Assembly: GCF_002113885.1 (NCBI RefSeq)
Contig: NW_018408787.1
Span: 247,185 to 311,184 of the forward strand
Length of the DNA stretch: 64,000 nt
Direction of reading: 5' to 3'
Origin: Mizuhopecten yessoensis
Taxonomy: Eukaryota
The notes beneath the pieces were generated by a model. That model had not been told where the DNA came from and made no database searches. It was given only the letters and a program-made list of their open reading frames with translations. Positions 27,215 through 64,000 of the stretch are shown one piece after another. Position numbers and translations under genes: made by a program. Positions within the stretch are counted from its first letter, which is position 1; each line of letters begins with the position of its first letter.

Positions 27215-30200
27215 ATGAAAGTAGTTTTGGATGGAAAGAAATATAGACTAAGCAAGGAGACAGATCGACTTTGCAGTTGTTGGCCCGAAAGCTTTGTCAG
27301 ACATACCTTCTGCGTCTTTGTTTGTGTATATATACTTTGGTCAGCGTATGAGATTGTCAACTTGAAAAAGGAGATACACCTACTAAAAGATGGTCATGGT
27401 TCAAAATCGGCTGAATACAAGGTAAACAAACCCACGACGGATATGGTCTCTCGTCCCGATACATCGCATACGTATGCAAACTGTAAACGTTTTATTGTGC
27501 ATTTTCTGTTTACTATCATGCATATGGACATTGATTTTAATTAGATGATTTTATCTAAAAGTTATTCTGATGATTAATTTTCGATTTCTATTAACATCAC
27601 AATAAATGTTTAATTTTTAAAGACATTTATTATTAAACATATTAATAAACACTGCACACGTGGATACATTTGCTTACAGATAAGTTCAGTATCTTATTAA
27701 TTTTAATTTTCTATTCCTGCATGTCGGGACATTTAAAATATCGTTTAATATTATTCAAATTATCCGGATCATTTTCTATTTTGGTTTAATAATCCTTTCA
27801 TTTTAATAATAATTGTATGCCTTTCGGTTCGTTGCCATTTGAAATTACATCAACGTTTTTTTTCTCAGTTCAAGTGTGAATGCAAATGTATTACTTACGT
27901 TTTTTTCAAAGCATTTAATTGAATTTATTACATACTTTATATAACATATATTGGTCACAGAGGAGTTCATTGAGTTCTAAAACCAGTCATCTATAAGTGG
28001 TGGAAGGGGAACACCACAACATCCCACAGGAACATTCACTTGACGACACAGGTTTCATATAACTTTAAAGGAATTTATTTCTTGGAAAATATCACTTTAG
28101 AAATTTACGGGTTTTCTATGCTTAGAAATCCCATATTCTGATAGATTATGTATTTTTTATTAGATTCTTGGAAATACCTTTGAACACGTGACAACTGATA
28201 ACATACCCTTGACCTTGGATGACACGTACGACGGAACCCATAATGTGTTTGAAGAACCTGTATTTCATCGTGTTGAACGGGCAGTTCATACAAAGGGTAA
28301 AAGAAAACGAAAACAAAAATCTGGTACTTATTTTTACTAACACTTTCATTGGTAATGCTACCTAGCCCTTAAATTGTATCTAAATTGATGCTTACCTTTA
28401 TAATAGAATTGGTAACATTATATATATGTATGTATTATTTGAAAATTCACACTTACAGCATTCTAACACGGAAATACATTATAATTTATAATGCATGGGT
28501 GTGGTTGCGAAACATTTGATAACTAAATGCTGTATTTTTTTCTGGTTGAGTTCGTATTCTATCCTTGTGTATTTAAATGAAAGAATGGTATCTTTTTACC
28601 ACATTGTCATTATTACAAACATCGTGTTCTGTGGAACAGGATGGCAAAAGCTAACGTCATAACAAGATTTTTACACATTTATTAGTGTAGTATATTTATA
28701 TGACTGGTGTTGTAGTTTGTTAACATTTTGACACGCTTGAAATGCACAAACACGTAAATGATTTAAGTGTGCTTCAAGTTATCATCCTTTTGTGTGTGTG
28801 TGTGTGATAAACTAATTTAACGGCATGTGTCGGTTTAACAAGTTACATGTATAACATAGATATACAGATCATCACATGCAGCTGATGACTAGCAATATAT
28901 TCATGATATTGTAGCCAGCACAACTCTTATGGAGATATATTACTTTGTGAAATGCCTGATTGTATACTTTGTCCAAACACTTAATCTTCTAAATCCGATT
29001 CATGCTATACCTTGCAGGTCACTGGCATAGCTTTACGCTTTGTCAGATACATAATTACAGCAAACCCACTTATTACTAAACCACACTATGCCTGACTGAT
29101 CAGCGATATGATAAAATATAATACATACTAAATAAAATATTTCAGCAATATCTATGATCTGTTTTATTGAAATTCGTTAAGCTATACTCACGATAATTTC
29201 TGATCGATACAAAATAACGGTGACCGTGATTACTATAACGAGTAATCATGACACGTTTCAGCTTTTCATTACACTAAATAAAGGCATACTCAAACCATTT
29301 TATTGAGCTTGTTATTCATTTTGATATAGTTGTTTCGCACAAAAAATGTCTTCTTTTAATAGAAAGCTGAAAATATTTTTATTTATCATTTATGTATACT
29401 AACGGTACAAAGTTATTAAGGTCCTGAATATTGCTTTCCAATTACCACTAAAGAAAAAAAGCGGAAATGTCCAAAGAAATGTAGAGGCCCTCGTGGTTTT
29501 CGGGGATTGAACGGCAAACCTGGAGTTAACGGCACGAAGGGTGTTCAAGGGAGTCCCGGGATAAGCGGACCGCCAGGGGAACGAGGACTCACGGGTCCCA
29601 TGGCGCCACCGGGACAGCCTGGACTTCCTGGTAAGACTACACGCCATCCCTTCAGATGCTTAACATTTATTACATATACACACAAAATATAGCTTTTTCG
29701 CCTAATATATATTTTTGAAAGAGATTCACATCAAACATTAAAAATAAATTTAAATTTGATTCGTGATAAACAGTCACACAACTTTCTTCAGAAATATTTC
29801 AAACTGTAAATATAATGATTTTTTTAGCTTTGCTTAAAATCTCCATTTTTTTTTTTGTTGCATACGTTTTCAGAAATTGCTGTATTCAACAATTTCATTA
29901 CTCAATGTAGACTACTTAATTGCAGAATAAACCTTATGTAACATCAACACTTTAATGGTATAGTGAATTATATCCGATTTTCAAAATTTCTGTTTCAGGA
30001 ATACAAGGAGCGAAAGGAGAGTCGGTAGGTCATTACGTTTATCGAATTATCCGCATTCACCAGAAACTGCATATTTAAACTTGTAAATTAAAGCAAAAGG
30101 GAAATACAAGAACCTCAGCTAATCGAAAGTTTATGGTATTTGTTGGTTAGAATTATTGTCATATTAAATTTGTAACCTGAATAGCCAGTTACATAAAGGG

Positions 30201-33289: not shown

Positions 33290-36192
33290 TCAAACATCAA
33301 ATATTGTACCCATCATCATGTTTCCTATTAAATGCAGGAACATGTGTTACAATACATACATCATGTAGTGATCATTGTGCTATTAGTACCACAATTTCAT
33401 TTAAGACACTTAAGAAAAATACTTTTAAAAAAGCTTCGATATATTTTAATAATGCATACTTTGCCAGTGCTAATACTTATTTATCAACAATTGATCCGGA
33501 TGAAGAGCTGAGTAATATTGATGATATTGAAATCTTAAACTAAAATTGTATCCAATAAGCTAATGACTTGTATTGACAGATTTGTACCAAACAGGACAGT
33601 GACAATTAGACCTAATGATAAAATATGAATGAATAATGAAATCCGGCTGAAAATGAGGAAGAGAAATAGGCAACATTATAAGGCTAAGCAAATAAATCCT
33701 GCCACCTCGTGGGATAAATACAGACAATTACGTAATTCAGTTATTTCAATGATTAGAGATGCGAAATAAAATATCTTAGCAAATTACAAAATTCTCTTAT
33801 TGACAAAAATATCCCTCTGGGTAAATGGTGGAGAATTGCCAAATCTGTTCTTCCCTCTAAAAAGAAAAAAATGATACAGATCAATATCAATATTACTGAG
33901 CAAGATGTTTATGACCAACTTCAACTCATTATTCCAAAATAGCCAGCAGGTCCTGATGCAATTCATCCTAGGTTTATCAAAGGTGTATCTGAATCTCGTG
34001 TAAAGTAATTACATATTCTTCTTAATAAATCAGTGGAATCCGGTCAATTACCTAAAGTCTGGAAAAATGCCAATGTCACAGCTGTATATAAGGGCGAAGG
34101 TGAGAGAAGTGACCCATCAAACTACAGACATACAGACATATGTCTATCACTCTTCTGTTTAATTAAATGCTTGAAAGAATTATGTTCAAATATTTGTTTA
34201 ACTATCTTTCAGTAAATCAGATAACTTCTAAGAACCAATCTGGATTCCTCCCCAAAGATTCTACAGTTAACCAGCTATAAGCAATATATGATTCAATTCT
34301 TAAGCAACTTGATAGAAGAAAAGAGGCCAGAATTGTGTTTTGTGATATAAGTAAAGTATTGATAGGGTCTGACATGATGGACTTGTGTACAAATTGAAAA
34401 AATATGGTATTGAAACCATTTTTCTAAATTGGCTTTCTAATTATTTAAGTGATAGACAGCAAAGAGTAATAATTGATGGGTACAAGTCTTCTTGGCGTAC
34501 ACTTACAGCCGGTGTTCCACAGGGCTCAGTCCTCGGGCCATATTTATTTCTGTTATATATAAATGACATAGAAAAATAAATTGAGTCAAATCTGATTTTT
34601 TTTTGCAGATGATATCTCACTATTTGTACTTATAGAAAATGATAACAAGGCTGCTGCTGACATTTTAAACAATGATCTCAATAGGATATCTATCTGGGCT
34701 CATAGATGGGGTATACTATTTAATCCTAGTAAAACAGAAGTTTTCTTGTATCAAATAAATTAAATGCAGATGAAATGCATCCTGATCTCACATTTCTTAA
34801 CAATTTTGTGGTGAAAAAGCATAAACATCTCTGTATTTTTTTTAACAGCCATGGTTTGTTGTCTGATCACATCAATTTCTTATATAATGATACATGTACA
34901 TTAATAAGATGCATTCAATTAGGTCACTCAAACACAAACTTGATAGGAAATCTCTAGAAATGATATAAAAGTCATATCTTGAGTATGCTAGTGTTGTATG
35001 GAATAATTGTAATCAAACTGAATCAGATCTTCTTGAATCTATCCAGCTAGATGCTGCTAGAATAGTTACTGGTCTCCGAAGAGGTACTAGTCATGAAATC
35101 ATCTATAATGAAACTGGATGGGATACTCTTAAGAAACGTAGAAAGGATCAGCAGCATTTATTGTTTTTAAAAATAATTAACCATGTTAGTCCTAATTATC
35201 CTTTTGGAATTGTTGAACCTTACATAGTCAGCAATGAAGCTATGACCCATCATGTGCGACATCAACGCATATTTAATCACCAATTTGTAGATCTAATGCA
35301 TATTTCAACAGTTTCGTTCCTAGCACAATGTCTTGGTTGAATAGACCTGAATGTAACTATTATCATTTGAGATCTATTAGTGAACTAAAAAAACAACAAC
35401 TTGTTCTTCATGCCATACCCCAAAATAATGAAGATATATGTACTAAGATTTTTAAATATGAAGGGACTAGATCTTTTAACATAATATTATGTCAACTTCG
35501 AAATCGTGCAAGTCAGTTGAACCCTGATCTCTTCAGAGACCATCTTAATGATAATCCCTCCTGTATATGTGGTTACAATAATGAAGATATGAGTCACTTC
35601 TTTTTGCATTGCCCTAGATATATGACTCAAAGACAAAATATGATAATATCTCTGTCTCATTTACAGCTTGACACAAATCTAAATTTACACTTTAACTTGA
35701 CCTTAACATTTATGAACATCTAATGTTTAATATTAATATATTGATTAAAGGAAGCAGTTTCCTTAGTGAAAATCTTAACTCAGCTATTCGTGTTTGTGTT
35801 CAGAGATATATAGAATCGACNNNNNNNNNNNNNNNNNNNNNNNNNNNNNNNNNNNNNNNNNNNNNNNNNNNNNNNNNNNNNNNNNNNNNNNNNNNNNNNN
35901 NNNNNNNNNNNNNNNNNNNNNNNNNNNNNNNNNNNNNNNNNNNNNNNNNNNNNNNNNNNNNNNNNNNNNNNNNNNNNNNNNNNNNNNNNNNNNNNNNNNN
36001 NNNNNNNNNNNNNNNNNNNNNNNNTGGCACTGATCTAAGTCTTATGTTCCTAAAGCATGTATGTAAATATTCATAGTTCATTATATTGCTATTGTTTGAG
36101 ATGTACCTCCTGGGAGAGGGCTTGCATAGGCTTTGCCTGTTGCCCAATTCCAATTAAATCTGATTGATTTAATAAAATATTTTGAAATGAAA
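33290..36192 (+). mobile_element. Degenerate non-LTR retrotransposon (CR1/L2-group LINE ORF2) with stops and frameshifts
   Basis: Motifs SDHCAI (end of APE endonuclease), WKNANVTAVYKG..DPSNYR, GVPQGSVLGPYLFLLYINDI, FADD, and a C-terminal C-x-C..E...HFFLHC knuckle. The 3' end AATAAAATATTTTGAAATGAAA lies beyond the assembly gap. Confidence 0.88.
35821..36024. other. Assembly gap (204 N)
   Basis: Run of N. Confidence 0.99.
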
Positions 36193-36517: not shown

Positions 36518-39500
36518 ATGAAAACTAACGGAGAACCCAGACAACTCGAAGGGTACAGGAACATAGGAAAGGGCAGTGCGTGTGTATGTGGACATTGGTT
36601 TGCAGTGTTAGCATGTGTTATCTCAACAGGAAGTTGTTTGTGTACAGTCGTCCTTTATCTTGAGGTACGGACTCTACGTGGGGAAGCAGAAAGACAACAT
36701 GTACAGTCACCGGCCTTCAAAACAAGTCATGAAATAAAATCGTCTACTGAGGTAACCACCGTACTCTCCGATGTGCTTGTATGCATTTTTCATGTAATGA
36801 GTCCTTGCGTTTTACATTAGTTGAAGTTAATCGCTTGCTCGTTTGTTAAACATTTCCAATTGATTTTCTCTCATATGATTGTTCTTTTGCAGTACTGATT
36901 CTATTGATATCGCAGCTGTATAGTTATCAAGTAATGCTAATTTTGTAATTATTTTCAGAATACAACGTTAGACCTTCGGACTCAACTGTTAAATAGACAC
37001 GTACACAGCCATACCTATAACAACGGTCACAAAGGCGAAACAAGTGTAACTGGCCTCGCGAGTTACCGTGAGAAACGAAAAACGGGGGAACGAAACAGTA
37101 AATATCATTACAATTTCATTTATTTGTCGAGATTATTTCAAGCTGTAGTTCGTTAGCTATATCCATGTTACTGATATATTAAACATTTATAGAGTCGCTG
37201 GACTGGGCCAGTCGCCAATAAGTAAATAGCTAACATATCATGTTCATCTTGAGTTCGTCATCCTAGTCTGGTCATGCTTAACACTTGTTTGTTACATTTG
37301 CCCACTCATTTTATATGCACAAAAGACTTGTGCAAATTTAACGTTTTTAATTACAGAACAATCCTGTTCATGTCAGAAAGGTGCGAAAGGTTCCAGAGGT
37401 CGAAATGGCAAGAAAGGTAAGCGAGGAAAGAATGGGAAAAGGGGAAAAAAAGGACCAAAAGGCGATAAAGGAGAGACAGCAGTGATAGGGGATATAAATT
37501 TACCAATCGGTAAGTAAACAGCGTCTGTATTACACACGTCTTTATCTAGGCAAACAACAACATTTTATGTTACAAATTTGAGGTAAAATTGTCTCATGGT
37601 TAATCTGAAATTTTATCAGAAGGAAAGTAACGTAACGTACATAATCTACCTAAAGTTCATTATACGGACAATGGTAACCTCTACAATTTCACACGGTATC
37701 TGAAAATTTGCACATATAACCTTTAAATGTTTCCTAAAGTTTACATATTGTAAAGCTGTCCATTACTACATAGTAAACCTGAATTTTACATAATGTAAAC
37801 GTGATTTTCATAACATAGTAAACGCAAAGGTTTTACATTGTAAAGCTAAAGTTTAACATAAGAAATACCTAACGTGTATCTGGGTAAAACGTAGATTTAT
37901 CATATAATAAATTTCAAGTTATAGTGAATGTAAAAAAATAGTAAAATTAAAGTTTTGTTTATCCTATTTGACGGTCAGATAAAGCATGATTTTTTTTATC
38001 CTTTTATACAGTAAGATACACTTTATTTTTCATTTATACCTTTTGAAGGTTAAATAAAGCATTCATTGTTGGTAACTACTTCAGAGTTAGATACAAATGG
38101 CCTAGACTTTAACTTATATGTGATGTATCTTTATTAAAGGAATACCGAGTGGTAATGGTGGGCTACAACCGATAAATGTACGTAATTCTTACTTAAAAAT
38201 CCTAGCATGATATTTTTATAAGCGTATGGAAAACACTATATAACGCATATAATGTGCTGAAATCCTCAAAAATGACAGCAATCAAAAATTGAGCATAAGA
38301 TTATCAAAGACGTGTTAACAGTGTCTTAAATGTATCAAGTGTCCCAACGCTTAAACTTCCGGAACACCATGAATCGCTTGCGGTTTCTGAGGAGCTTGAA
38401 TAATATATATTTAATTTGGAATATTATCGCATTCTTTTGTCTGTTAAAATGCGAACTGTTGAAGGTGTAATTAAGAAAGTCAGTATGTTCCCCTACCTTC
38501 TCTATGAATAAATTAGATGCTATTATGTTCTTCAGGGACATCGCCATGTCCACTTCATCAGTGATTATGACAAAGATGTACCATGGGATGAATTTAAAGG
38601 TAGGTTATTTGGTAAATAGTAGGTTAAATGTTGGCTAGATAGTCCGTTAAACGTTATAGTCACTTTCTCACACATCATTTAGACAATGTCTCCCGTTTTA
38701 CCAGTTTAGGACCTCTCTGAAACCGCTTTGTTTACTTCTATCATTCCCTACTAAATGACAGATAGCCCTTAGAAACAAAACAAATACGCTGATGTCACGA
38801 GAACAATAACATATGACATCAAGATAAGCTTTTGAAAAGAGAAGTCACGTGGACATAAGGATAATAAACATATTACGAATGCTGATTTTCATTGTCTGCA
38901 AACATATCATTGATAGAATGAAAGGAAAAAAATCATCTCCTGCGGTGAGGATAAGTCAGAGAAATTGCAACCATGTGAAATTCTTGAATGTTCAACCCCC
39001 AACTTAATCAAGCCTCTGGTCATATAACCAAGACTTTTACCTCTCAGGTTGTGATTTCTCTGTCACACCATCAAAGTGGTAAACATTCAAACAAACTGTA
39101 GATATGATATTTAGGACGAGCAGCAATTAGTTTAAAGTTTACCTTGGATAGCGTTGCGAACTATCTTTGCTTGACAGCAAACAAAGTAGTAACGTAGTGT
39201 ATTTTAACCATGTTTTGATTTAGCAACTTCTTTTCGGGAAAATTTACGTCTGAACAAATAATGTCATACAGTATATTATAGACATTTTGAACCAGTGTCT
39301 CACACATAAAACATTGGTTTTACAGGTAGAGGGTGTCGTTCACTGTTCGATGGCGAGGTGTGTAGAAATAGAAGGTTTTCTACTACAGGTAAATATACAC
39401 AATGTACCCAAAGAACTGTACCTCAATATGAACATTTAATGACCTTCGATATAACATTTCTGGTCACCGTCTATAACATTTGTATATATATGAATTCGTT

Positions 39501-47005: not shown

Positions 47006-50000
47006 ATGGAAATACTACCTGAAAATCACCTTAGCAACGAACGTGCACTGTGTAGCTCCATGTCAAAGGACAATGGTGGACACGATCGCGAGGATGTAGA
47101 AATGCAGTCAGTGGAAAATTGTAGTAGCTGTGCAAACTGCAGGCGTAGGTACAGGAACCATATTTTCACCTCGTGTTGTGTGTGTGTCGTCATCGTGGCG
47201 ATGTGCTGCATCATTATGGGTTACAACAATCACGCATGCGCACTGACAATGGACAGTTTGAATACTAGATTTCTAAATATTGACAAACAAATCAGCAGAC
47301 TTCAGAAAAAGTATTTTATCGCAAAAGTTTCAAAAGTAATGGCAGATCGTTCCTCCTTCATTAGTCGACAAGAAATGGTAAGATGGTCTAATGATTGTGG
47401 AAATAAAACTGTGTTTAATTGTTTTTATAGGAACATCAATATCCATCAATCAAAATTGTCAAGGGAGGTTATTCCCCATTTCTCAGACAAATGGAGATAA
47501 ACTCTATTTAAAGAAATTGTCAATTTTATTTTATTATTTTTTCCATATGCTTTTACTTTATTCATTAATTTTATCTTATTTTGCAAAGGAGGATAACGAA
47601 AATGTTAATGGGGACAAAATGCAACCACAAGACAAGGCTTTGGAAACAGATAACCCTGGTGAAGTGAACATTGTCAAAAGGTCTGCAAACAAATGTCAAA
47701 ATGTACAAAAAGGGAAAAAGAGGAAGAGGTGCTTGCGAAAACAAGAAAAACAGCAAAAACGCAGGCATACCGGACAATCTTTGGTAAGACTGGTGCAAAA
47801 GACTGTACACAAAACCGTGGAGCAGGCTGTAACAAAAGCTATGAAAAAGGTAGACCGTAGATTTTAAAATCTGTACAGAATCCTAGCTGAAAGATGAAAA
47901 AAGAATAAGAAATCATAAAATCTTTTTGCGTTTTGCAAACAATAGCATGCCTATTTGAGACAACCCGTCTGTAAATATACTGATACTTGATTATATTTCT
48001 ACTTTAGCTAGAAATACATCTAAGAAATATTTTTAATGACGTCACGATTGAATGATATTATTTCAAAGAAAATCAGCTTCCGGTTTCATGCCGATAGATT
48101 TAAGAGTATGTACTTAGCTACTGATCCCCTTTTGAAACATGTTTGGCTCATAAGTAATACTATTGGTAGCATACATGGTCTGATAAAGGGAGGTAAGACT
48201 CGAGCAAATTGAATAACTGTCCAGAAGCACGGTGTCCAATTCGCTGAAGGATCATTTCCCTTCACCAAGACATTCAAGGTAACAAAGTAACTTCGATCTC
48301 TGGTTTTTAGCTCACCTGGTCCAAAGGACCATGGTGAGCTTATGCCATACCGCAGCGTCCGTCGTCCGTCGGCCGTCCGTCAGCTTTTCCTTTAAATCAC
48401 TACTTGTCATGAACGATTGAGCTGATTTTGACCAAATTTGGTCAGAAGTATCATTAAGGAGACGGGGAATATATTTTGTATAAATGGTGGGTCTGGCCAC
48501 CTGGGGGTTAAAGGGCTGGGCCCAAAAGGGGAAATATAGCAAATTCTTTAAAATCCTTCTTCTTCTATAGGAATGAAAGGATTTGTTCCATATTTTGTCT
48601 GAAGCATCCTTGGGTGAAGGGACACCAATTTTCTATGAACGGTGGGTCTGGCCCCAAGGGGTCTGAGGGGCGGGGCCCAATAGGGGAAACATAGCAAATT
48701 CTTTAAAATCCTTCTTATTCTGTAGGAATGAAAGGATTTAGTCCATATTTGGTATGAAGCACCGTGGGTCAAGGGACTCAATTGTATATAAGCAGTGGTT
48801 GTGGTCTCCAAGGAGGCAGAAAGGTGGGGCCCAATAGGGGAAATAGAGGTACACCTTTAAAATCCTTCTTCTACCATAGGGATGAAGGGATTTCTTCCAA
48901 ATTCGGTCTGGATGATCTTATGCAAAAGGGACTCAAAATAAACAGTGAGTGTGGCCTCCCTTGGGGCAGAAGGGCAGGGACCAATAGGTAAAACCTAGCA
49001 AATTCTTCAAATACATTCTTCTTCTGTACGAATGACAGGATTTTGTCCAAATTTGGTATGAAGCATCCTTAGGTAAAGGGGAACCAATTTTTTGAAAAAC
49101 GATGTGTCTAACCCCCCTGGGGGCCGCGAGGCGGGTCCCAATAGGGGAAATAGAGGTAAAACATTTAAAATCCTTCTTCGACCATTGGGATTAAGGATTT
49201 TATCTTATTTAGTCTGGAGCATCCTTGAGCCAAAGGGACTCAATTTTTTTTTTTTATATAAACGGTGGGTATGACCCCTCTAGTGGTGTAGGGGTGGGGC
49301 TCTGTTTGAAGTTTGTTCTCGCTATTTCTCAAGTACTGGATGGATCTTTCTGAAATTTCATATGTGTTTACAGCACCTACCATTGAGTGCTATATGTTTA
49401 CTTCATACCAATTATTTTAAATATATTCAGGTGAGCGATACAGGCCCTCTTGGCCTCTTTGTCCTTTTTCTTTTCTATTCTGAATTTACGTCTATTCCCC
49501 CCCAAATGCGACCTTAGTAATGAACGTGATAAATCGTAATAAAAATAGGGAATTAAAATAACAACGGTACCTTATGTGTTGTATACTGTTGTTATAATTA
49601 TAATAAATAATAGAATAACTTGACTATAAATTCAGTTTTACCGTTTATTCTGAAACACAATATTTTAAAGTAATGACATCTCAATTTTAATCCATTTGTA
49701 GTGAAACATGATTTGTTTGTCATGTTGTTGTTTTTCATTTTGTTGCACATATGTAAAATATAAGTTTGAGAGAAGACAAGACACAATTTGAAAATTGATA
49801 GAAACAGATTCATGTCAAACCCACCTTATCTTATGTTGGAAATTAACGCATAAAATCGGATGCCTTTTGTAACAAACCTGGTTGTTTGGAGTTTGTTAAA
49901 GTTTAATTATTTAAAATTCCTTATTTATCCGATATAGCATTGTTAAGCAGGAAAACAAAGCCTTTTTCTGCACTTACAATATTTTTTTTATTATATGCAC

Positions 50001-53000
50001 AGACTTATGAAACGATATTATTGAAAAAAAGCCTAATTAGTAAATAGAATCATATCGATAACATTTATAAACTTTTGATCAGAGAACGACTTTGCTGTCT
50101 TGTGTCAAACAGTTGATTTGTAGATCGGGGTTTCAGGTCCTATTTATGCATATCTAGAGTAAGATAATTGGTCCAAATAGATTACAATATTTGGCAGAAT
50201 ACCACAAACAGTATATTGACACGTTTGAAGATAAAATGTGTCAGTTAATGTACAATCAATGACATCTTTTAACTATGTATTGTCTACCTATTTTGAACAA
50301 GATTACAAGAAACAGAAAATATAGCAATGTATCAAGATAACCCGACATCATCAGCTGATCAAACCTGCTTGTTTAATTACGAATATAAAAAATGGCACCG
50401 CCTATTTATATTTACGAAAGGTAGACAAATAGAACAATTCAGATTAAACAATACCTTTCAAAATAACTATTTATGGACACGATGGATCCTTTTTTTGTGA
50501 AGTTTCTTAAACCACTGAAACAATACAGTTAGTGACAATGTTATCGTCAATGTCTTCTAGATAGCTTCGACACCGCAGTCGAATCCGTGTCAGGATGCCT
50601 TTAAATGTGTGCACACATAAATGATAAGATCTCTGAATTAACGATATGGACACTCGTTAGTTATCACGGTGTCGTCCTTCATATGACTAGTGCCTGGTTG
50701 TACTTTAATAGGCAAAGGCAGCTCGCCATCTGATTGGGGGGAATGAGGTTATACATAAGGAGGAGATTAAGTGATGAAGCAGTTGAGCTGAATGAAAACC
50801 GATGATATTTATATTTCCCTATTTGTAGAAGACATAAGTTGCGAACGCAGAAGTAACCTCAATTTAATTATCAACTTGATGATTCTGTTCTATTGGAAAT
50901 TCTTAATCGAAATAGATGTTTGTAACCATATTTAAAAAAAATGTAATATAGCTGTTAGCATTGAACAAAAATGTATATAGTTTTATCAAAAATCATCAAG
51001 CCGTATAAAAATAAAGCGTAATGGATAAAAAGAAAACAACATAGTATAACATTTCTTATTTTAACCATAAAAATAATATCAATGTTTCTATACTTAAAGA
51101 AAAAAACACATTTCCCATATTTCCATAAAATAAAGATGTACACTCAGACCTCCAAGGATTTTTTTCCCAAATCTAGGCCATGCCTTTATAGATCGCCCAA
51201 AGTTTTAGAAGTATCTGGCCACTTTTACATTAAAACACTATGCCTATTTTGTTTCGGAACTTTCCACAACATCGGGTTACGTCCATGCCGTTTTAGATCG
51301 CCCAAAGTTTTAGAAGCATCTGGCCACTTTTACATTATAATACTATGGTGTTTCGGACCTTTTCACAACATCGGGTTACGTCAGGTGTGTGAAATGTCCA
51401 TGATGTGTCTTTCTCTTTCTTCTAATTTCTCCTGAATTCCTGTTCGAATCATCTTATGTAACGGCATAAAAAATATTTAAAATAAAATTCATAATAAAAA
51501 CACACACACCAACAGCCGTTGTGTTATTGGTATCATGATCAATTTGGCACGGTGACACAAATTTATCACAAACATGAGCTAATCATCTTTATAGTTGTGC
51601 TATTTCTCTTGTTTATTTTAAAAATCAGGACTTAAATCGATTTTTTTTCGAAAACTTGTCGGGAATCTTTTATATAGTTACGAAAATGTACATAATATAT
51701 GTATATATTATCGATATGTCAAACACGATATAAAGATTAGATACGTGCGAATAAGTAGAACGCCGGCCACCTATGTACACGAAATCAATCACCTACATAC
51801 CGTTCAATGCTTAGTATGCTAAGGGGGCAGACACATAAAATTTGATGTAGACTATCCAATTGTTACTGACTTTAACAAGTACACGGGTATGGGGTGGCCA
51901 TGCAGCCTTGAACTAATTCGAGATGGTCGTACCTAAAACCAGCCACGCTTCGTTGAATTTTAAACAAAATAAACTACACATGTATAGGTTTCCGAGGGGC
52001 TTTACAGCCTTAACATGTTAGATCGCTGATTGGATTATGGGTCGGCCAATCACTACAACTTCCTGGTCCTCAATCATGACTCATCAGCTACTCTGGGTGA
52101 ATACATAAATAGAAATACAGCGAACGCCTCTCAATAAATTCAAGATATACTAAAGCAGTAAGCGTTAAATAGAATAGCGCACATGTGCACGTTTTGAACA
52201 TTAACTTTTGTCATAATTAAGAAGAAAAAAAACATGTAACCGAATTCGGTGTAATATTTGTGTGTTTTATTGAGTAATTTAAAAAAAAAAAAAAAAAGAA
52301 TTCCGGGCAGATTTTCAATAAATTGTAAAGCCAACAGCTATCCCTAACGATGTGGGTATAACGTCACAATTGCAATGATGTCATGATTTATAATCTAGAC
52401 TTATGATTTCATAGCTCACAGCTGACGTTGATAAAGTGGCAATTGAGAGCAAATGTATATTTCGTAACGTAGACTTAAACTTAACAGGTTATCGTTGTCC
52501 TTGTTACTTAAGTTTTAAGTTAGAACTGTGTCCTTTTCTATTGGTTAATAAACGCCAGCGTGTGTTATTGCCGAGAATATTCGTTTGTTGTAGTAATACA
52601 CCGTTTGTCGATCAATTCACTCAGCATCCATACTCTCATAAGGGAACAATGAACAATTATATACCAATACCTTTCTACCTGTAACTAACAGTTTACCCAT
52701 CTCTGAAACATCACGGAAACAAAGGCATTAATCCAAAGGAATAAAATCACATGTCACAATTTCCACGTCATTGTGGAATTCAACCATTTGAATGTGAAAC
52801 TGTATGACAAAGGAAAAAAACGTTGTCCGCTCGTCCATCCACGCCCTTCAGCCATACGATTAGAATGATATACCTGAAATCTCAATGTATAATGCAGACA
52901 TTCTCCTCTTTTCCCGTTCCAGGAACACGTCATTACCATTTCTACGTATTTCATGAATGCCTGTAGTTCATGTTATTACACCGAATATATACCGGGGAGA

Positions 53001-56000
53001 TTTAGGCAGTTCACACAAAATAGTCCACAAAAGACAAAGGACGCAATAGCTGATATCTGAAAGAGACAGACAGGTTCCGGTTGTGTAGGTGTTAATACCT
53101 AACACGTGTATCATTCTGGAACACAACTTTCGACTGCATTCTCTTATAAAGGCTTTCATAATGACGTCCCATTTTCTTTGATCTCTCCTCACATGTTTCC
53201 TATCGGTTTCAGTTTTTGGCTGTGAACGCTGGTTTAAAACACCTTACTTTTGAATTTACTTTGTAGCAGGTTTTTTTTCTGTTGAAGCCATTCATGGGTG
53301 TGAAGTTGTCATACAGCATTTTTTCCATTTTAACTTAGTTGGGTTTTTATATTTTACTATCATTTTCCAATTAAACCTTACAATACATGGACGTTGACGC
53401 TGTTCTATATCTTTTCTTCGCAAAGAGACTTGGGAGGTTCTTTATTGTGTACTATTTTCTGTTTTACCTTTCTTTGAAACTGTTTTACCTTATCACATAA
53501 CCCTGAATGTTTGCGATAACTCATGCTAAAATCTCCCCATCACCGTCAAATATTCAACGTCGGTATCATAGCTCAGTATTTGTTATCTTCAGCAGAACAT
53601 CACAGTGTCATAAAGATAGAGATTGTTTTTCATGCGACAATTTCCAAGAAACTGGGAGTTCATTGCATAATGATAGCATGCATAATCATTCTTTACAAGC
53701 GGGACAACTTCTTAATTCCTTACAGCATATGATTGATACCGATTACATAATGTTACAAGCAAAGGGACAACATGTATTTATGGCAGTCTTTAAATATATG
53801 CAATGGCTAAAAAGCTAGCAAACGTATAACAGCTACAGGAAACATAAGAAAAGGAGGAGGATGTAGCAAAATTAAGCTGATAAGCATTTTATGGACATGA
53901 TAAGTTAACTGGAGGGCTAAGCTTAGAGATTATCGTTTCAGTAATAGGGAACACATCTCACTTCTCCAAATGGTTAGATACAGATCCTGGTAGGTCATTT
54001 ATGTACCCGTTTGTAAACTGATAGTTTAACACTTATATATTTGTTAAACCATGTTACTCTTATATTTTACAAAGAACATATTCGTGTTGATATAACTCAA
54101 TAATCAAAGCAAGGTTTTCATTGAAATAACAACATTGATTGTGACGTCATAATTAAGTTCTTTGCCTCTCGATATTCTATGTACCTTTAACACAGCATGA
54201 TGTTTGCCTTTTGTGAATGCTATAAATGGAATTTCATGTTTTTCTTGTGACGAATGCCATTGATGTTTCAATTTATAAAATGTCTTATTTTCACTTTTCT
54301 ATTTATGAATATAAACAACAGGTTGTCACTAGAAATACAGATTAAAGAACAAATAAGAACGATAAATTTAAATGAACGTAATTAAGAAATTCAAACACAA
54401 TATCCGTTATACTGCACCATATCGTAAATTCGTGTATCTACGACTTAGCAGTGGTAATAAAAGTAAACAGATAAATAACCATAGGTCTGAAGTGTCCCTA
54501 AATATGTGTAGAAAATAGCAAATAAGGCGTATGCTTACACAGTCATTGATCTAGAAACTTGCTGTGTTGATAATATATTACTGATTATAGTGTGCACATT
54601 ATAAGGTAGTATTACACGATTACACATAATTACTTTCTGCCTTATATTTTTTCACGTATAGGATATGTTAGTTGCTATTATGTCAACTTTAAAGCATTGC
54701 TACCTTTTAGTTTTTATTTTGATGTTAATCGAAACATATGTGTGTTCTGTGCTTAAAAAATGCCATGCGATTCCTAGCGATGACATACAACTGGTGTTCA
54801 TAGGGGAAAAGGAGATACACTCTTAATTTATTTTAACTTTTGTTTTCTCAGGAGAAATACATCTTTATAATATCTGGTGCATAGAGCGACATAGACTTAC
54901 GTCACAAACACAGCGCTGCTATATAGGCTATTTGTGTAATCACGTTCTGGGAAATAACTGTGTTTATGTTATAAATAGGCTTTTCTCCTATCGGAAATAT
55001 GACTAATACCAGTTATAACACGTTATATGCGCGCGCTTATATACAAATATATTAAGTGGAATGCAGGTCATGTTCGATTTGTTATGGGTACTAGGAATAC
55101 GATATCAAATGCAATGAGTAGTTTTGTAAAAATATAAAGTTATGTTTGTCTTAAAACCACGAAATGTTTGACCGAACAAAATCCAAAATATTCATTAAAA
55201 TATCCATATATTGTTTAATGGTCTAATTTAAAGTCAAATATATTAAACTTGTGTGGTTTTGTATGTTTAGCATTCGGTACTGTTGGTGCATTTCGAAGGT
55301 GATGGGAATGAACATTATCCCCAGGGTAAAACCACTTACTGTCACTATTAGTTTTGCTGTGCTGTGTGGTAGATTACAGGTTTATAAAGACAGACATTCA
55401 ACACGAACCAGTAGTTAAAGTAGATAGACAGGTAGTTAATAATGTGGTCAAAATAAACAGGTGGTCACTATCGAAAGAGGTGATATCTCAGACAATTAAA
55501 CTTGAGTAATAGAAAGTTGGGTTGTAACAGTGTTTTACTTGAGTTTCAGAAAGGTGATCTGAATAGACAGGTGGGCTGTAAGACTATCTAACTTGACTTA
55601 TAGATAGATGGTATGTACGACTATTTAACTTGAGGTTCAGATAACTGGTCTGTAAGACTATTTAACTTCAGTAATAGACAGCTGGTATCAGGAAGTATTT
55701 AACTTGAGTTTCAGTTAAGTGGTCTGTCAGACGACTTTACTTTAGTAATAGACAGGTGGTATAAACAATATTTAACTTGAGTAATAGACAGGTGGTATAC
55801 AACAATATTTAACTCGAGTAATAGACAGGTGGTATACAACAATATTTAACTTGAGTAATAGACAGCTGGTATACAACAATATTTTACTTGAGTAATAGAC
55901 AGGTGGTATACAACAATATTTAACTCGAGTAATAGACATGTGGTATACAACAATATTTAACTTGAGTAATAGACAGGTGGTATACAACAATATTTAACTT

Positions 56001-59000
56001 GAGTTTCAAACAAGTGGTCAGTAGAACTAAGTAGTTTTTGATACCACCTTTCTATTACTCAAGTTACAGGTGGTCTCTACCACTGTTATTCCTTGAGTAC
56101 GAGACAGGTCGTCTGTAAGACGAGTTAACTTGAGTAAGAGACAGGTCGTCTGTAAGACGATTTAACTTGAGTAATAGACAGGTTGTCTCACGACTTTCTC
56201 ACTTTAGTTTTATACAGGTGGTCTTTAAGACTATCTCACTTGAGGTTCAGATAAGTTGTCTGTAAGACTATTAAACTTGTGGTTCAAATAAGTGGTCTGT
56301 AAGACTATTTAATTTGAGGTTCAGATAAGTGATCAGTAGGACTATTTAACTTGATGTTAAGATAAATGATCAGTAGGACTATTTAACTTGAGTAATAGTC
56401 AGGTGGTAATAAGAATATTTAACTTGAGGTTCAGATAAGTGGTCTGTAAGACGATTTTAGACAAGTGGTCTCTACGACTATTTAACTTGAGTCATAGACA
56501 GGTGGTCTGTTAGACTTTTTCACTTGAGTTTTAGACAGGTGATCTATCAGATTTGTTAACTTGAGTTATAGACAGGTGGTATCTCAGTAATTTTTTGTTG
56601 TTTCTATAGGACATTGTTTTAGTCTCTACGGATGGCTGAACGTTAGCTATGGACAGGTGGTTGAATTAGACAACTGATCGCTTAGACAGGGTATATATAT
56701 ACTAGTATAAATAAGTTAGGTTTTAAAGGACAGATAATTAGGCAATCACGACAGACAAATAGAGTATAAGGCTGATTTTACTGGACGCATATGCGGTTGT
56801 CTCTAAAGAGAAGTTGTCTCTGTATCTGAATAGGACATGACATTACGTAGGCTATAAGTCACGGGTTAGACTGGATATTTATTACAGCAAGGTATTAAGC
56901 CTCACTCTGTTGACGGATGCAATTTTAAGTTTGGTTTTATTTTGTTTAACGTCCTTTTAACAGGTATAATCATTTAAGAACGTGCGTCCGTACGTATTGT
57001 GGATGCAATATCAGAACTATTACCGGATCACATATTTTAAGTATCCTCATCAGACTGGATACTTCACATTCCGATCATTTTCAGTAAATAACTGTTTTCG
57101 GAAAAAAGAATAACAAACCAAAATAAAAGTAATGATGGGTTATTGAAAAATACTATAAATATCCGATTTAAAGAATTCCCTAGTATTACCGGGATCAGGA
57201 TTTAGGAGGTTCCACAAGACCTGGCACAATATTGGCTATACAATATTGACAAAGACCGTGATGCTTATTGCAAAAGTAATTTTGATACGACTTTTATTTT
57301 TATTATGTGATCAAGTGTTTCAATATGTCGAAATTGTGTCAGTAGTTTATTATTTGTTTTAGCAGTCTCTGCTGTCAATGCATTTTGAAGGCGATGGTAA
57401 CGAACACCGCCCACGTGGTAATGGTCTGTCAGAAGCACCTGTTTATATTTATATTTATATGGTACCGTATCACACTTCCTGTTGAGTCTTCTTCATCCGA
57501 GATCCAAATAAGCGGAAAGCGTCCCTCTTAAATATGTTCAATTTTTAATAAAAGCAATGTTTTACAGTTAAACGACAAGCTAAATTGAAGTGTCAATTAG
57601 TTGGGAAAATTACCGATAGTTAGTTTCTAGCAAGTTGTAACATTTCCTTTCATTTTTTTGTTTTTGTTTTTGAACACCAACGTTTCCAGTTTTGCTACTT
57701 AGGTGTATTACGCTGATACAAAATAATATACACAGAACATGAAGTGTGATACAGGATAACAGCACTAAACTGCTCATAGTCTATATCCATCCATGCTTGC
57801 TTATGTTTTACCATCTTTGTATTTAGTGATATTCACGACTTCAATGCCTTTGCCAAATCAACTAAACCCATAATTGCAAAATGGTTACATATCAATAAAA
57901 AGTAAAACCGGTACACTATCAGAAAGCTGAACTAAGGCAAAACACTGGCATACTCTTATGTCTGTTGCTTTTTCTTCTAGGGGAGAGGGATGTCGTTCAT
58001 GCATTTTAAGGCGGATGATAACGAGGAACCACCCAACGGTAAATTTTATACCACTATACCAAATATAAATTAAAATATATACTATGCAAACGGCAAATAA
58101 AAAGCAACAACATGGAGTGTACCTCCTTTGTAGAGAAGGTAGTCGCAGTAGTGCAGGACTCACCCATCCAACTGTCTGTAGACATTGCTTAGGTACAAGA
58201 TGAACTCACGATAGTTTACAATGTACTCTGGTAACAATCACTTCACGTGGCAAGATTATAGTGGTCATTTGTCAAAGGTTAAAGGTCTAAGGTCACAATT
58301 GACAACATTTCGGTTTGGTTAGGTTTAACTTTGTTTAACGGCTAGTTTTATTTAAGGACGTGCGTCCATATGTTTAGTGCATGCGTGCTTGCGTGTGTAT
58401 ATGCAGAGGACAGGGTATGTTGGAGTGCTTGCCTTCTTGTGATAGCGCGGATCTGATGCCGACTTTATAGTGCCATCTCACTGAAATACAATGCCGAAAG
58501 CACCCAGCACAGCATTCCTGCCGGTCACATTATACTGACAACGGTTGAACCAGTTGTTGCCATTCCCCTAAATGCTGAATGTCAAGCCGGGAATAGAAAC
58601 TACCATTTTAATGACTTTGGTATGTCGCGGCCTGTGGACAGAACCCATTGCCTTCCTCACCTGGGTGAACGCTCAACATAAAGGCCAAACGTGAGGAGTT
58701 GCCAAGCATGGCGCTAGGAAATAAAAAGTAGTTGGAAGTAAAAAAACAATTAAAGATCCCAAATATTACAATGGGTGCAAGTCTTGAAGTAATCCATGAA
58801 TATATTCATAGCAGTCCTTACAATCAGATAGGTAAAACATAGAGATTAATATTGATTATAGTAAAATACACATCAAAACCACCAAACAATACAAAAGCAA
58901 TTAATCAGACTCAAGTATATTATATTCCATTAGTGAAACCATACCACATTTAGGTATTAAATGTTGTAAATGTAAAATACCGATGGATGTAAACTTTAGG

Positions 59001-60880
59001 GTCAGAAGTTATAATGCTGAACTTGTGCACTTTTAACTTAAATCTAGCCTATGGTATTTTGAATCCAACAATAACTATGAAACATTGTTAAATAAGGACA
59101 GATTAATAAGGTCAGAAAAGCATGACTGTCATCAAAACATTTACAGCAGGGAAGGAAGTACAGTTGTATCTGATGTCACGTATCACATTAAAATAATGTA
59201 TTTCAGAAAATCACAGGAAACATACAATTCTGAACACAAACTATTTGTTTCGTCCGCATTATGATCAGCATTCCGACCACGCAGGTCCAGTCTAGTAGTC
59301 AATGAGTGCGATCGTTTAGGACCCATACATCCTTAACGAGTCCGCATGGGATAGGTGTGTCTTTTAATGTGTAGAAAATATATATTTATGCTGAAAAATT
59401 AAATTGCAGATGAAATGATTACGAATTCGCTCGCCATTCTTAACAACGAAATCTAAAAATATGCCATATGCACAAACGGCAATGCTATCTTCATGCATGT
59501 CTTTCATTAGAATAAAAAATATCTTTCCTATACAATGATATTATCATTCACTATAATATGACATTTACTTTTATCACTTGCCGTACAAGCACAATTGGTG
59601 ACCATTATGTAATTATGTTGCTTTGCTTTATAAGAACCAAACCTTTTGACCCACGTAATGTAGCTTGTAGGCTGTCACACAATCATTAACATTGCCTTGA
59701 TATGGCACAAAGTCATCACTAACCAAATATTTGTAGAATTCATATGCACCTCATAACTTTGCTTTGAGATCCAATTCTATCTGAAAGAAAAATGTTATCA
59801 TTATTTTATTTGGTTTGAATAATTTCCACTGTCCATCTATTCGTGTGAATTCAGTTTGTAGCAGTATCTTAAACAAGAAGTTTAAGTAAATCAATAGAAA
59901 AATGTTATCTTATTTAATTCTCTTTCTGCAGAGAAAAGTTTAAAGCCTTTTGTCTCGAAACACGTAAAAAGTTCAAATATCAATACTGAGTAGCAGTTTG
60001 CTGTATATTTTGCAATTTATTTAAATTTAAATTCAAATTCCTGTATCTTGTTGTCACATGATGTAGCTATTCGGTTGTGTAAAACAGGTACGGTTATGCA
60101 AGTATATCGCACATTTTATTGCTTATTTCCGCGGTTATTAATTTACAGAGGATTTTGCAGGGAGATTCCACAAATGGCAGTATTCCGATTGGGCTTTTAA
60201 GAAAAAGGACCTGAAGGAAAAATTTAAGTTGATACACTCGACTGGAGATGTCATAATCAGTGAAGGGGGAATATACATGCTGTACGCTCAGGTAAAACAT
60301 GGTCAATTATACCTCCAATAAACATCAACATGTCAGAGCATGCATATTTTAATGACACAAAATGCTGACTTCTTTTTGAGGAACTATTGCATAATTATGA
60401 TGATCAAATTATAAATCCAAATTTCTATTGTAGAATCGTAAATAACAGCATAATAATTAAATGAAAATTGTTTACTTATATGATAAAACCTTTTATCTTA
60501 TAAAACATATGTAAGACTATTCCGGCGTTGATCAGCGAGGGGAGATAACTCCTTAGTTATGAAATATTGTGTTCCTTTTTATTGAATTGTAGGTAACGCT
60601 GATGGGAAAACCAGATCAAGGTTTTAAGGTGGTTGTTCAGCGCCAAAATAAACAAAAAGATATTTTGTCGAAATGTATGATGAACTTCGAACCCGACACA
60701 CAGGAAACTCCCATACAATCACGTCAGGAGGACGGGTATATCACGTGCTCTTCTGTTGGTGTGTTTAAACTAGAAAAAGGAGATAGTGTCTTTCTACAGC
60801 ATACCAAGGACACAAATGTGAAAGCTGACTTTCGGGGAAACGCGTCTTTCTTTGGCTTTGTGAAGTTGGGAGATTTGTAA
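47006..60880 (+). CDS. TNF superfamily ligand gene 5, Eiger-like THD, no collagen (~372 aa; exon 3 has three alternatives)
   Basis: Exons: 47006-47377 (TM CCVCVVIVAMCCIIMGY); 47589-47849 (IVKR|SA, basic stalk; alternative donor at 47783); one of 55271-55325, 57363-57417 or 57981-58038; 60149-60291 (WQYSDW..GDVIISEGGIYMLYAQ); 60593-60880 (KC...TCSSVGVFKLEKGD...SFFGFVKL). Confidence 0.9.
48304..49462. mobile_element. Non-autonomous Helentron/HINE-like element with an internal ~156-bp tandem array
   Basis: Starts TTTTTAGCTCACCTG followed by a GTCC microsatellite, contains 5-6 units of ~156 bp, and ends with the sub-terminal inverted repeat CAGGTGAGC plus a 3' hairpin AGGCC-CTCTT-GGCCT. Confidence 0.8.
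51178..51382. repeat. Tandem duplication, ~2 x 105 bp
   Basis: CCATGCC..TAGATCGCCCAAAGTTTTAGAAG at 51178 and 51283. Confidence 0.85.
55271..55325 (+). CDS. Gene 5 alternative exon 3a (HSVLLVHFEGDGNEHYPQ)
   Basis: TTTAG|...CAGG|GTAAAA; 55 nt, phase 0->1. Confidence 0.8.
55420..56690. repeat. ~37-bp satellite (AACTTGAGTAATAGACAGGTGGTATACAACAATATTT) between exons 3a and 3b
   Basis: Homogeneous core at 55740-56000 with degenerate flanks. Confidence 0.85.
57363..57417 (+). CDS. Gene 5 alternative exon 3b (QSLLSMHFEGDGNEHRPR)
   Basis: TTTTAG|...CGTG|GTAATG; 55 nt, phase 0->1. Confidence 0.8.
57981..58038 (+). CDS. Gene 5 alternative exon 3c (GRGMSFMHFKADDNEEPPN)
   Basis: TTTTTCTTCTAG|...AACG|GTAAAT; 58 nt, phase 0->1. 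Confidence 0.72.
58308..58700 (-). mobile_element. Meta-domain SINE; a decayed 3' fragment of the same family lies at ~56930-57060
   Basis: The - strand has ACTGGTTCAACCGTTGTCAGTATAATGTGACC (Meta-domain-like) and an AAAC-rich tail. Confidence 0.65.
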
Positions 60881-61090
60881 CTGTGCACACATTTTATCCA
60901 TAACACTTATAGGTTCCATGTTTGAAGTGATAAAACTGTTGTAAAGAGATGGAGTTTTTCTACAGCATACCATGGACACAAATGTGAAAGCTGACTTTCG
61001 GGGAAGCGCGTCCTTTTTGGCTCTGTGAAGTGGGGAGAGTTGTAATTGTGCACATAACACTTTACTATTCGATGTTCGAAGTGATGAAAC
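60781..61090 (+). repeat. Tandem duplication (~165 bp) of the end of the gene 5 CDS into the 3' UTR
   Basis: CTACAGCATACCA.GGACACAAATGTGAAAGCTGACTTTCGGGGAA occurs at ~60794 and ~60960. Confidence 0.9.
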
Positions 61091-63287: not shown

Positions 63288-63310
63288 GTAAGTGAACCTT
63301 TTGCTTAAAA

Positions 63311-63643
63311 ATGGAGTGCAAAGTGCAAAAACATCCAGTCATCGTCTTTGACAAGGAAGGCGGATCTTCCACTGGGGATGGGAATTGCACCTCTTGCAGC
63401 CGTTGTGGCTTAAAGTTCGTAAGTTGGACGAATCTCACTCTTCTCTTCGTATTATTTCTGTCAAACATTTTTCTTCATTATAAGTGTATGACAATTTCAA
63501 ACGAACTGTCAGAATTACAGCAATCTCAGAAAAGAGGTGTTCCAGCCCAGGCTAGCTATCTTACTTCGTCAGTTCAGGATCTCGCAAGTGACTCCAAACC
63601 CCACAACAATGAGAAAACTCTGAGCAGAAGAAACAACCGCCAG
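63311..63643 (+). CDS. First coding exon of a probable sixth TNFSF ligand; the gene continues beyond the window
   Basis: Type II TM (LTLLFVLFLSNIFLHY) followed by a coiled-coil-like stalk. NCxSCxxC motif shared with gene 5, and a phase-0 donor CAG|GTAAAG as in all paralogs. No THD is visible in the window. Confidence 0.7.
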
Positions 63644-64000
63644 GTAAAGTTATCAAAATACAACATAAATAATATAAAGTTATCGATGCATATAATTATG
63701 GACGTTTAACAAAAGAATCTATAATGTATATCACTGAACAAAATTTACTCCACTGAAACAGGAATAAGTTAAACAGGTATGATAATTATTCATAAAATAT
63801 TACGCTAATTTGGTAGTCCCATATGGAAAAATACACATATTTGAAATGTTAAAATGAAGATTTTGAAACTGTTTTATTAGTTTAATTACAATGCAAATAA
63901 GGTCAGATGTTGTTTCCTTTCTATGACAGCCATTCATGTATTTGTACAATTGACCTTCTTTAATAGCTCGCAGTTACATACCGGCTTATTTTAGTCTTTT

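What the first reader, a model, noticed from the sequence alone, without database searches (positions are those of the whole stretch)
55271..58038. Three tandem mutually exclusive exons encode alternative strand-A/AA' loops of a TNF ligand
Seen: three homologous exons of 55, 55 and 58 nt (HSVLLVHFEGDGNEHYPQ, QSLLSMHFEGDGNEHRPR, GRGMSFMHFKADDNEEPPN), each with intact AG/GT sites and all phase 0->1. Exon 2 ends in phase 0 and the next exon (60149) starts in phase 1, so exactly one must be included; zero, two or three shift the frame (3a+3b reaches TGA inside 3b). In 3a versus 3b the HFEGDGNEH core differs only at synonymous positions, implying purifying selection. The introns (~2 kb and 563 nt) are too long for steric exclusion. 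Known: the AA' loop region of THDs contributes to receptor contact, and splicing switches receptor choice in EDA-A1/A2. Inference: a small Dscam-style cassette gives three ligands with differently charged loop ends (YPQ, RPR, EEPPN), and possibly heterotrimers. I know of no described MXE cassette in a TNF ligand, but could not search.
Basis: partly seen in the sequence, partly recalled or inferred. Interest (0 to 1): 0.92.

Follow-up and report, generated by a model that had tools for sequence, protein, structure and literature searches.

The report
Swappable receptor-binding exon in bivalve TNF
A scallop TNF-type signalling gene carries three alternative copies of one short exon, and its oyster counterpart four; each message uses one copy, swapping the stretch that in the human relative EDA helps grip the receptor, so one gene probably makes several differently tuned signals.

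Summary
The gene is Mizuhopecten yessoensis LOC110463616, an Eiger/EDA-like TNF ligand in a tandem TNF cluster. Exons 3b and 3c are mutually exclusive: RefSeq isoforms of three scallop genera always carry exactly one, and Logan contigs show 3b-to-4 and 3c-to-4 joins but no 3b-to-3c join. Exon 3a is old and under purifying selection (intact in Pecten, decayed in Ylistrum, not found in Argopecten), but no isoform seen uses it and I could not lay reads on it. The probable oyster orthologue has four such exons, used singly in five species; an unidentified animal has at least three. The swapped peptide aligns to EDA 252-264, part of its EDAR-binding patch. The Eiger-Grindelwald interface appears not to use this segment, so receptor switching is inferred, not shown. 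Conserved long-range intron pairings and a 28-nt intron in oysters suggest how exclusion works. RefSeq holds the 3b/3c and oyster isoforms unremarked; I found no paper on such a cassette in any TNF ligand. The scan noted other such cassettes in this genome, none in a TNF ligand.

The parts
47006..47377 (+). Coding exon 1: cytoplasmic tail, hydrophobic Cys-rich membrane anchor (type II), start of stalk
   Evidence: Matches N-terminus of RefSeq proteins P0001/P0012; orthologous in three scallops
47589..47849 (+). Exon 2: basic stalk; ends in phase 0; alternative donor after 47783 removes 22 aa
   Evidence: exon 2-to-3c loose end in run X1
52018..52085 (.). Conserved intron element (paired CCAAT-like boxes, ETS-like ACTTCCTG, AP-1-like TGACTCA); probable enhancer or internal promoter
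   Evidence: Conserved in four scallop genera; CCAAT-like pair plus ACTTCCTG also in both oyster loci; function untested
55271..55325 (+). Cassette exon 3a (HSVLLVHFEGDGNEHYPQ); the type shared with the first oyster exon; use not shown
55480..56661 (.). 37-nt tandem repeat array in intron 3a-3b with one inverted copy at 56028-56083
57363..57417 (+). Cassette exon 3b (QSLLSMHFEGDGNEHRPR); NAGNAG acceptor (57366) and conserved +6 donor adding GN
   Evidence: RefSeq isoforms; 3b-to-4 joint in runs X1 and X2
57465..57483 (+). Stem 1, 5' arm (48 nt after 3b)
57737..57755 (+). Stem 1, 3' arm
57851..57889 (+). Stem 2, 5' arm (selector-like, between 3b and 3c)
   Evidence: holds in Mizuhopecten, Pecten and Argopecten, not Ylistrum
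57981..58038 (+). Cassette exon 3c (GRGMSFMHFKADDNEEPPN)
   Evidence: RefSeq isoforms; 3c-to-4 joint and exon 2-to-3c loose end in run X1
59597..59627 (+). Stem 2, 3' arm (docking-like element D, about 520 nt before exon 4)
   Evidence: Conserved in four scallops; pairing
60149..60291 (+). Exon 4 (starts in phase 1); second acceptor at 60161 drops four residues (EDFA) at the position of EDA D265-S267
60593..60880 (+). Exon 5: C-terminal part of the TNF homology domain and stop
   Evidence: Pfam TNF E 1.5e-05, above cut-off; 100% to XP_021374059.1

Best explanation
An old mutually exclusive exon cassette in a bivalve Eiger/EDA-like TNF ligand. Each mature mRNA joins the stalk exon to one strand-A/AA' exon and then to exon 4 (shown for 3b and 3c; inferred for 3a). 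The protein keeps one jelly-roll core but swaps strand A and the surface segment after it, and a 12-nt tandem acceptor adds or removes four more residues at the same surface. By homology to EDA, whose residues 256-265 form the central EDAR-binding patch, the isoforms most likely differ in receptor affinity or receptor choice (inferred). Exclusion most likely comes from three layers: long-range intron pairing that loops out downstream alternatives (stems 1 and 2 bring the 3b donor toward exon 4; an oyster stem does the same for its first exon), steric clash across a 28-nt intron in oysters, and frameshift with probable NMD for zero or double inclusion (pairing and frames computed; their effect on splicing inferred). 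The set of exons turns over by birth and death: 3a and 3b arose from one exon within scallops, and 3a has since been lost in some genera.
For: Exactly one alternative in every RefSeq isoform read from Mizuhopecten, Pecten and Argopecten and from five oyster species. Joints 3b-4 (depth 22.9) and 3c-4 (23.8) in one run, no 3b-3c joint listed. pN/pS Mizuhopecten-Pecten: 3b 0.07/0.59, 3c 0.02/0.31, 3a 0.18/0.48, and 0.04/0.53 for the last 11 codons of 3a; oyster exon 1 0.03/0.58. Four phase 0-1 exons in the same order in Crassostrea angulata and Ostrea edulis, with a 28-nt intron in both; three more in unidentified locus L009. 3a, oyster exon 1 and L009 exon 1 share VHxEGxGxExYP and are first in order. 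Four upstream paralogues show one such exon each. The profile aligns the cassette to EDA H252-N264 and the tandem-acceptor piece to D265-S267; EDA Q256, S258, A259, Q261 and D265 contact EDAR, and A259E or D265G abolish binding (PMC9918506). Stem 1 has 15 consensus pairs, two with both-sided changes. Stem 2 has shuffle p of 0.007 or less in three of four scallops. The oyster stem is the best partner in the whole interval in both genera, p 0.002.
Against: No binding data; the receptor is unknown. The Eiger residues named at the Grindelwald interface are N333, D337, D377, H388, R391, R396 and R401 (PMC8024323), none in the N-terminal segment, so a Grindelwald-type receptor might not sense the swap. 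Read evidence is two contig sets with RNA only guessed; two raw RNA runs had no coverage of the gene. Stem 2 fails in Ylistrum and ranks only second or third among partners of D in two species. No conserved competing selector for 3a or 3c was found. The last-exon tree puts scallop and oyster genes on one side of the upstream paralogues but does not resolve them from the downstream ones. Model confidence over the swapped loop is modest (pLDDT about 59-71).
Confidence: 0.62

Rival explanations
1. The cassette is real, but it tunes folding, trimer stability, shedding or heterotrimer assembly and not receptor recognition.
For: Strand A is a core strand of the fold (established TNF-fold knowledge). 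The named Eiger-Grindelwald contacts lie elsewhere. An unchecked scan note reports Grindelwald-type receptor genes in this genome (s1-554170).
Against: Alternatives differ most in the exposed segment after the HF/QI motif, in length (16-24 aa) and charge, and each type is separately conserved across genera. That segment is a proven receptor contact in EDA.
Confidence: 0.2
2. In scallops only 3b and 3c work; 3a is a dying exon that is no longer spliced in (this concerns 3a only and is compatible with the best explanation for the rest).
For: 3a is in none of the RefSeq isoforms read from any scallop. It has lost its acceptor and carries an 8-nt deletion in Ylistrum and is not found in Argopecten. 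Its first seven codons diverge fast.
Against: Splice sites, frame and length are intact in both Mizuhopecten and Pecten; the last 11 codons show 3 synonymous against 1 replacement change; flanking intron does not align. It is the exon type shared with oysters and L009.
Confidence: 0.4
3. The scallop, oyster and L009 cassettes arose independently by repeated duplication of one ancestral exon and were not inherited as a cassette.
For: 3a and 3b are closer to each other (score 70) than to any oyster exon (46 at best); 3c has no clear oyster counterpart. The paired elements do not align between scallops and oysters.
Against: The same exon of the same gene is multiplied in all three lineages with enough sequence to tell, while four neighbouring paralogues show one copy each. 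The tandem acceptor and the upstream intron element are shared.
Confidence: 0.3
4. Assembly artefact, or remnants of partial gene duplicates in a tandem cluster.
For: The gene sits in a tandem TNF cluster, and its 3' UTR holds a partial copy of exon 5.
Against: Same order in four scallop and two oyster assemblies; spliced joints; purifying selection; no duplicated exon 2 or exon 4 beside the copies.
Confidence: 0.01

Closest known systems
Vertebrate ectodysplasin EDA-A1/A2
   Same: Among the closest solved folds (Foldseek E 7e-9, VIA Z 15.8). Splicing alters the TNF domain, and in EDA it switches receptor (own knowledge; EDAR against XEDAR discussed in PMC9918506). The swapped segment is homologous to the EDAR patch II.
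   Different: EDA-A1/A2 differ by two residues elsewhere in the domain through an alternative splice site (own knowledge), not by exon exchange. The scallop protein has no collagen segment.
Insect Eiger
   Same: Top structural match (6i50, Z 17.1). RefSeq names the Saccostrea orthologue 'protein eiger-like'.
   Different: No such cassette is known to me in Eiger; the named Grindelwald contacts avoid this segment.
Downstream-docking MXE clusters (Drosophila 14-3-3zeta, Mhc, MRP1, Dscam exons 4, 9 and 17)
   Same: Tandem duplicated same-phase exons; a conserved element in the downstream intron pairs with an element after an alternative exon (PMC6071210).
   Different: Only one well-supported partner per downstream element; three to four variants, not dozens; stochastic choice not shown; found in a mollusc cytokine.
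FGFR IIIb/IIIc and Drosophila baboon a/b/c
   Same: Mutually exclusive exons that exchange a ligand-receptor contact surface (own knowledge; baboon is listed as a three-exon cluster in PMC6071210).
   Different: Those are on the receptor side; here the ligand is switched.

Membership tests
TNF superfamily ligand | C-terminal TNF homology domain | tested here: met
   Pfam PF00229 above cut-off on exon 5; model matches Eiger, EDA and APRIL, Z 15-17
TNF superfamily ligand | Type II membrane topology with stalk | tested here: inconclusive
   Hydrophobic segment near the N-terminus and basic stalk seen in the alignments; no topology predictor run
TNF superfamily ligand | Trimer that binds a cysteine-rich-domain receptor | not testable with these tools
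   Only monomer models available
Ectodysplasin (EDA) proper | Collagen-like segment in the stalk | tested here: not met
   No Gly-X-Y run in P0001 or its orthologues
Eiger/EDA group | Orthology by phylogeny | not tested
   Only best structural and profile matches; no tree with Eiger or EDA
Mutually exclusive exon cluster | Tandem homologous exons of similar length and identical phase | tested here: met
Mutually exclusive exon cluster | Exactly one exon per mature transcript | tested here: met
   Met for 3b/3c and the four oyster exons in RefSeq isoforms; joints
Mutually exclusive exon cluster | Every member is spliced in (3a) | tested here: inconclusive
Docking-site/selector (Dscam-type) cluster | Conserved long-range pairing that loops out alternatives | tested here: met
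   (computed pairing with conservation, not probed in vivo)
Docking-site/selector (Dscam-type) cluster | One docking site with competing selectors for each exon | tested here: inconclusive
   Candidate partners after 3a and 3c are not at homologous positions across species
Docking-site/selector (Dscam-type) cluster | Stochastic per-cell choice | not testable with these tools
   Needs single-cell or tissue-resolved junction counts

The most novel reading that the evidence does not exclude
The first TNF-family ligand whose receptor specificity is set by a mutually exclusive exon cassette: inherited from the common ancestor of oysters and scallops, chosen by competing RNA pairings, and combined with the tandem acceptor to give six to ten binding surfaces from one gene (more in mixed trimers), each addressing different members of the expanded bivalve TNF receptor family.
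Probability: 0.35. Interest if true: 0.85.

Novelty: new variant of a known kind. Interest (0 to 1): 0.72.

Why it matters
Bivalve TNF diversity is usually ascribed to gene duplication (PMC4346834). This gene adds a second route: exon exchange in the probable receptor-contact surface, kept in two bivalve orders that split in the Palaeozoic (own knowledge). It gives a natural panel of ligands that differ only in strand A and the AA' segment, useful for pairing orphan mollusc TNF ligands with receptors and for testing how that patch sets specificity. Gene-level expression studies and single-isoform recombinant assays in farmed oysters and scallops would miss the switch. It also offers a small, testable case of RNA-pairing-guided exon choice in a mollusc.

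Tried and rejected
Artefact or separate partial genes: rejected. Further hidden cassette exons in the scallop interval: none by similarity scan or splice-site scan. Steric exclusion in scallops: rejected, introns are 563-2037 nt, though it fits oyster exons 2 and 3. The element at 52018-52085 as a docking site: rejected, no partner at a consistent position, and its motifs look like DNA-binding-factor sites. Selectors after 3a and 3c: not consistent across species. A profile search reached no further named taxa; the metagenome scan found nothing; L012 held only the last exon. Raw RNA runs X23 and X24 had no reads on the gene. The single-sequence fold was poor (pLDDT 58). Literature: ten searches and four topic papers read by keyword gave no description of the cassette; Gao et al. 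2015 (PMID 25910814) is not held, and most subscription journals are not covered. Left out on purpose: searching a joined spliced model (window exons were searched singly by reference; full-length queries were database proteins by id; exons were joined only inside a local script to locate stop codons); laying reads on 3a, because the 37-nt repeat lies between 3a and 3b and the tool turns long repeats away; the N gap at 35821-36024 was left untouched.
Full report
Identity and setting. The window has 35% GC and holds a head-to-tail cluster of TNF-family genes: five last exons hit Pfam TNF, though only exon 5 of the gene in question passes the curated cut-off, and a sixth gene appears to start at about 63300. 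Exon 5 is 100% identical to XP_021374059.1, LOC110463616 of Mizuhopecten yessoensis. The coding exons are 47006-47377, 47589-47849, the cassette, 60149-60291 and 60593-60880. A model of the TNF domain (pLDDT 73) matches moth Eiger, EDA and APRIL best. There is no collagen segment, so it is Eiger/EDA-like and not EDA itself.

The observation. Coordinates, lengths, splice dinucleotides, phases and peptides are as stated. Zero, two or three inclusions give stops 77-230 nt before the last junction, which would normally trigger decay (decay is inferred). The three exons are the only such candidates in the 12.3-kb interval. Each of the four upstream paralogues shows a single phase 0-1 strand-A exon, so the exon boundary is shared by the cluster and the multiplication is special to this gene.

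Which exons are used. RefSeq has 20 protein isoforms. The 17 I could read each carry either 3b or 3c, never both and never 3a. Two exon-2 donors, times four forms of 3b plus one of 3c, times two exon-4 acceptors give exactly 20, which leaves no room for 3a. Pecten maximus and Argopecten irradians show the same 3b/3c pattern. These are automatic models, so I laid reads on 57100-60900. In contig set X1, 3b-to-4 (depth 22.9) and 3c-to-4 (23.8) both occur, and a loose end joins exon 2 directly to 3c. X2 shows 3b-to-4 only. No 3b-to-3c joint was listed. Contigs show presence and not absence, RNA status is a guess, and two raw RNA runs had no coverage. Exon 3a lay outside the stretch.

Conservation in scallops. 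3b and 3c are present with intact sites in Pecten, Argopecten and Ylistrum, with pN far below pS. 3a is intact in Pecten, with 3 synonymous and 1 replacement change in its last 11 codons but a fast-changing start. In Ylistrum it has lost the AG and 8 nt while keeping a recognisable core. In Argopecten it was not found. So 3a was functional in the scallop ancestor and may still be, at low level or in unsampled conditions.

Beyond scallops. The best oyster match lies in a TNF cluster whose upstream genes match the window's upstream paralogues; a last-exon tree is compatible with orthology but does not prove it. RefSeq isoforms of Crassostrea virginica, C. gigas, C. angulata, Saccostrea cucullata and Ostrea edulis show the same four alternative peptides at this position, one per isoform. 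In the C. angulata and O. edulis genomes these are four phase 0-1 exons in the same order, and the second and third are separated by 28 nt in both, too short to splice out (established knowledge). An unidentified low-GC animal contig (L009) has three more. Scallop 3a, oyster exon 1 and L009 exon 1 share VHxEGxGxExYP and come first (shuffle p below 0.001 for 3a against oyster exon 1). 3a and 3b are sister copies made within scallops; 3c has no clear oyster partner. A 12-nt tandem acceptor on exon 4 is present in all eight loci examined. The simplest reading is an old cassette with exon turnover, but repeated independent duplication is not excluded.

What is swapped. The family profile aligns the cassette to EDA H252-N264 and the optional four residues to D265-S267 (residue numbers from my knowledge of EDA, consistent with the chain ranges). 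In the EDA-A1/EDAR crystal structure, Q256, S258, A259, Q261 and D265 form the central contact patch, and A259E or D265G abolish binding (PMC9918506). Net charge after the HF motif is -3, -1 and -3 for 3a, 3b and 3c, and oyster exons range from 16 to 24 residues. This makes altered receptor affinity or choice the best guess. Against it, the Eiger residues named at the single-domain receptor Grindelwald lie further along the chain (PMC8024323), so the effect depends on the receptor type.

How exclusion may work. Aligning introns gave short conserved blocks. Stem 1 (57465-57483 with 57737-57755) forms in all four scallop genera: 15 consensus pairs, two with changes on both sides, shuffle p 0.003-0.01. 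Stem 2 pairs 57851-57889 with element D at 59597-59627 and brackets 3c; it holds at homologous positions in three genera (p up to 0.007) and fails in Ylistrum. Together they would bring the 3b donor toward exon 4 and hide 3c. In both oysters an element about 70 nt before exon 4 pairs best, of the whole interval, with one 48-73 nt after exon 1 (-25 kcal/mol, p 0.002), which would hide exons 2-4. This is the downstream-docking layout described for 14-3-3zeta, Mhc and MRP1 (PMC6071210). Arms were picked after looking, four related sequences give little covariation, and competing selectors for the other exons were not established, so this step is a supported hypothesis only.

Prior knowledge. The 3b/3c and oyster isoforms sit unremarked in RefSeq as uncharacterized or eiger-like proteins. 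No held paper names these loci or links mutually exclusive exons to a TNF ligand. Two recent surveys of invertebrate TNF genes do not mention splicing. Coverage of subscription journals is poor. Scan notes suggest that duplicated-exon cassettes are common in this genome (unchecked), so the splicing type is ordinary and the interest lies in its place and age.

Verdict. Real, conserved and larger than first seen. Two exons are shown in use in scallops and four in oysters; the third scallop exon is conserved but unproven. New variant of a known kind; interest 0.72.

Noticed in passing
window 52018-52085; L005 about 14100-14145; L006 about 12990-13030: Intron element with two facing CCAAT-like boxes and ACTTCCTG (ETS-like), shared by scallops and oysters; scallops add an AP-1-like site. 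Probably an old enhancer or internal promoter.
   Followed up: partly
window 60149 and 60161: 12-nt tandem acceptor on exon 4 in all eight loci, at the position of EDA D265-L-S. From memory, vertebrate EDA has isoforms lacking residues 265-267; a paper search did not confirm this.
   Followed up: partly
window 57418-60148 against 60292-60592: Contig depth in the introns around the cassette (about 18-43) is 2.5-5 times that of intron 4-5 (7-8) in both contig sets, which hints at slow or retained splicing at the cassette; contig depth is a poor measure.
   Followed up: no
window 60922-61018: Partial copy of the end of exon 5 in the 3' UTR (82% identical); it also matches exon 5 of the other scallops.
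   Followed up: no
window 55480-56661: 37-nt satellite in intron 3a-3b with one inverted copy (56028-56083) that could pair with its neighbours; a weak trace is in Pecten. It might affect 3a use.
   Followed up: no
L005 15664-15721: Some oyster models and a Logan transcript read the first cassette exon in another frame as part of an alternative 5' end joined to a later cassette exon; possibly traces of double inclusion or internal starts.
   Followed up: no
window 4085-40407 and 63296-63706: Four upstream TNF paralogues, some with collagen-like exons (for example 29420-29689, 37230-37514), and the first exon of a probable sixth gene; order is partly conserved with the oyster cluster.
   Followed up: partly
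L007 479-533: Unidentified animal contig with one strand-A exon of the QIEG type, like oyster exon 2, and the same tandem acceptor; the contig ends too soon to show more.
   Followed up: partly
window 34733-35720 and 48458-49248: ORF pieces that look like a decayed retroelement (by eye), and a 155-nt tandem repeat in intron 2.
   Followed up: no
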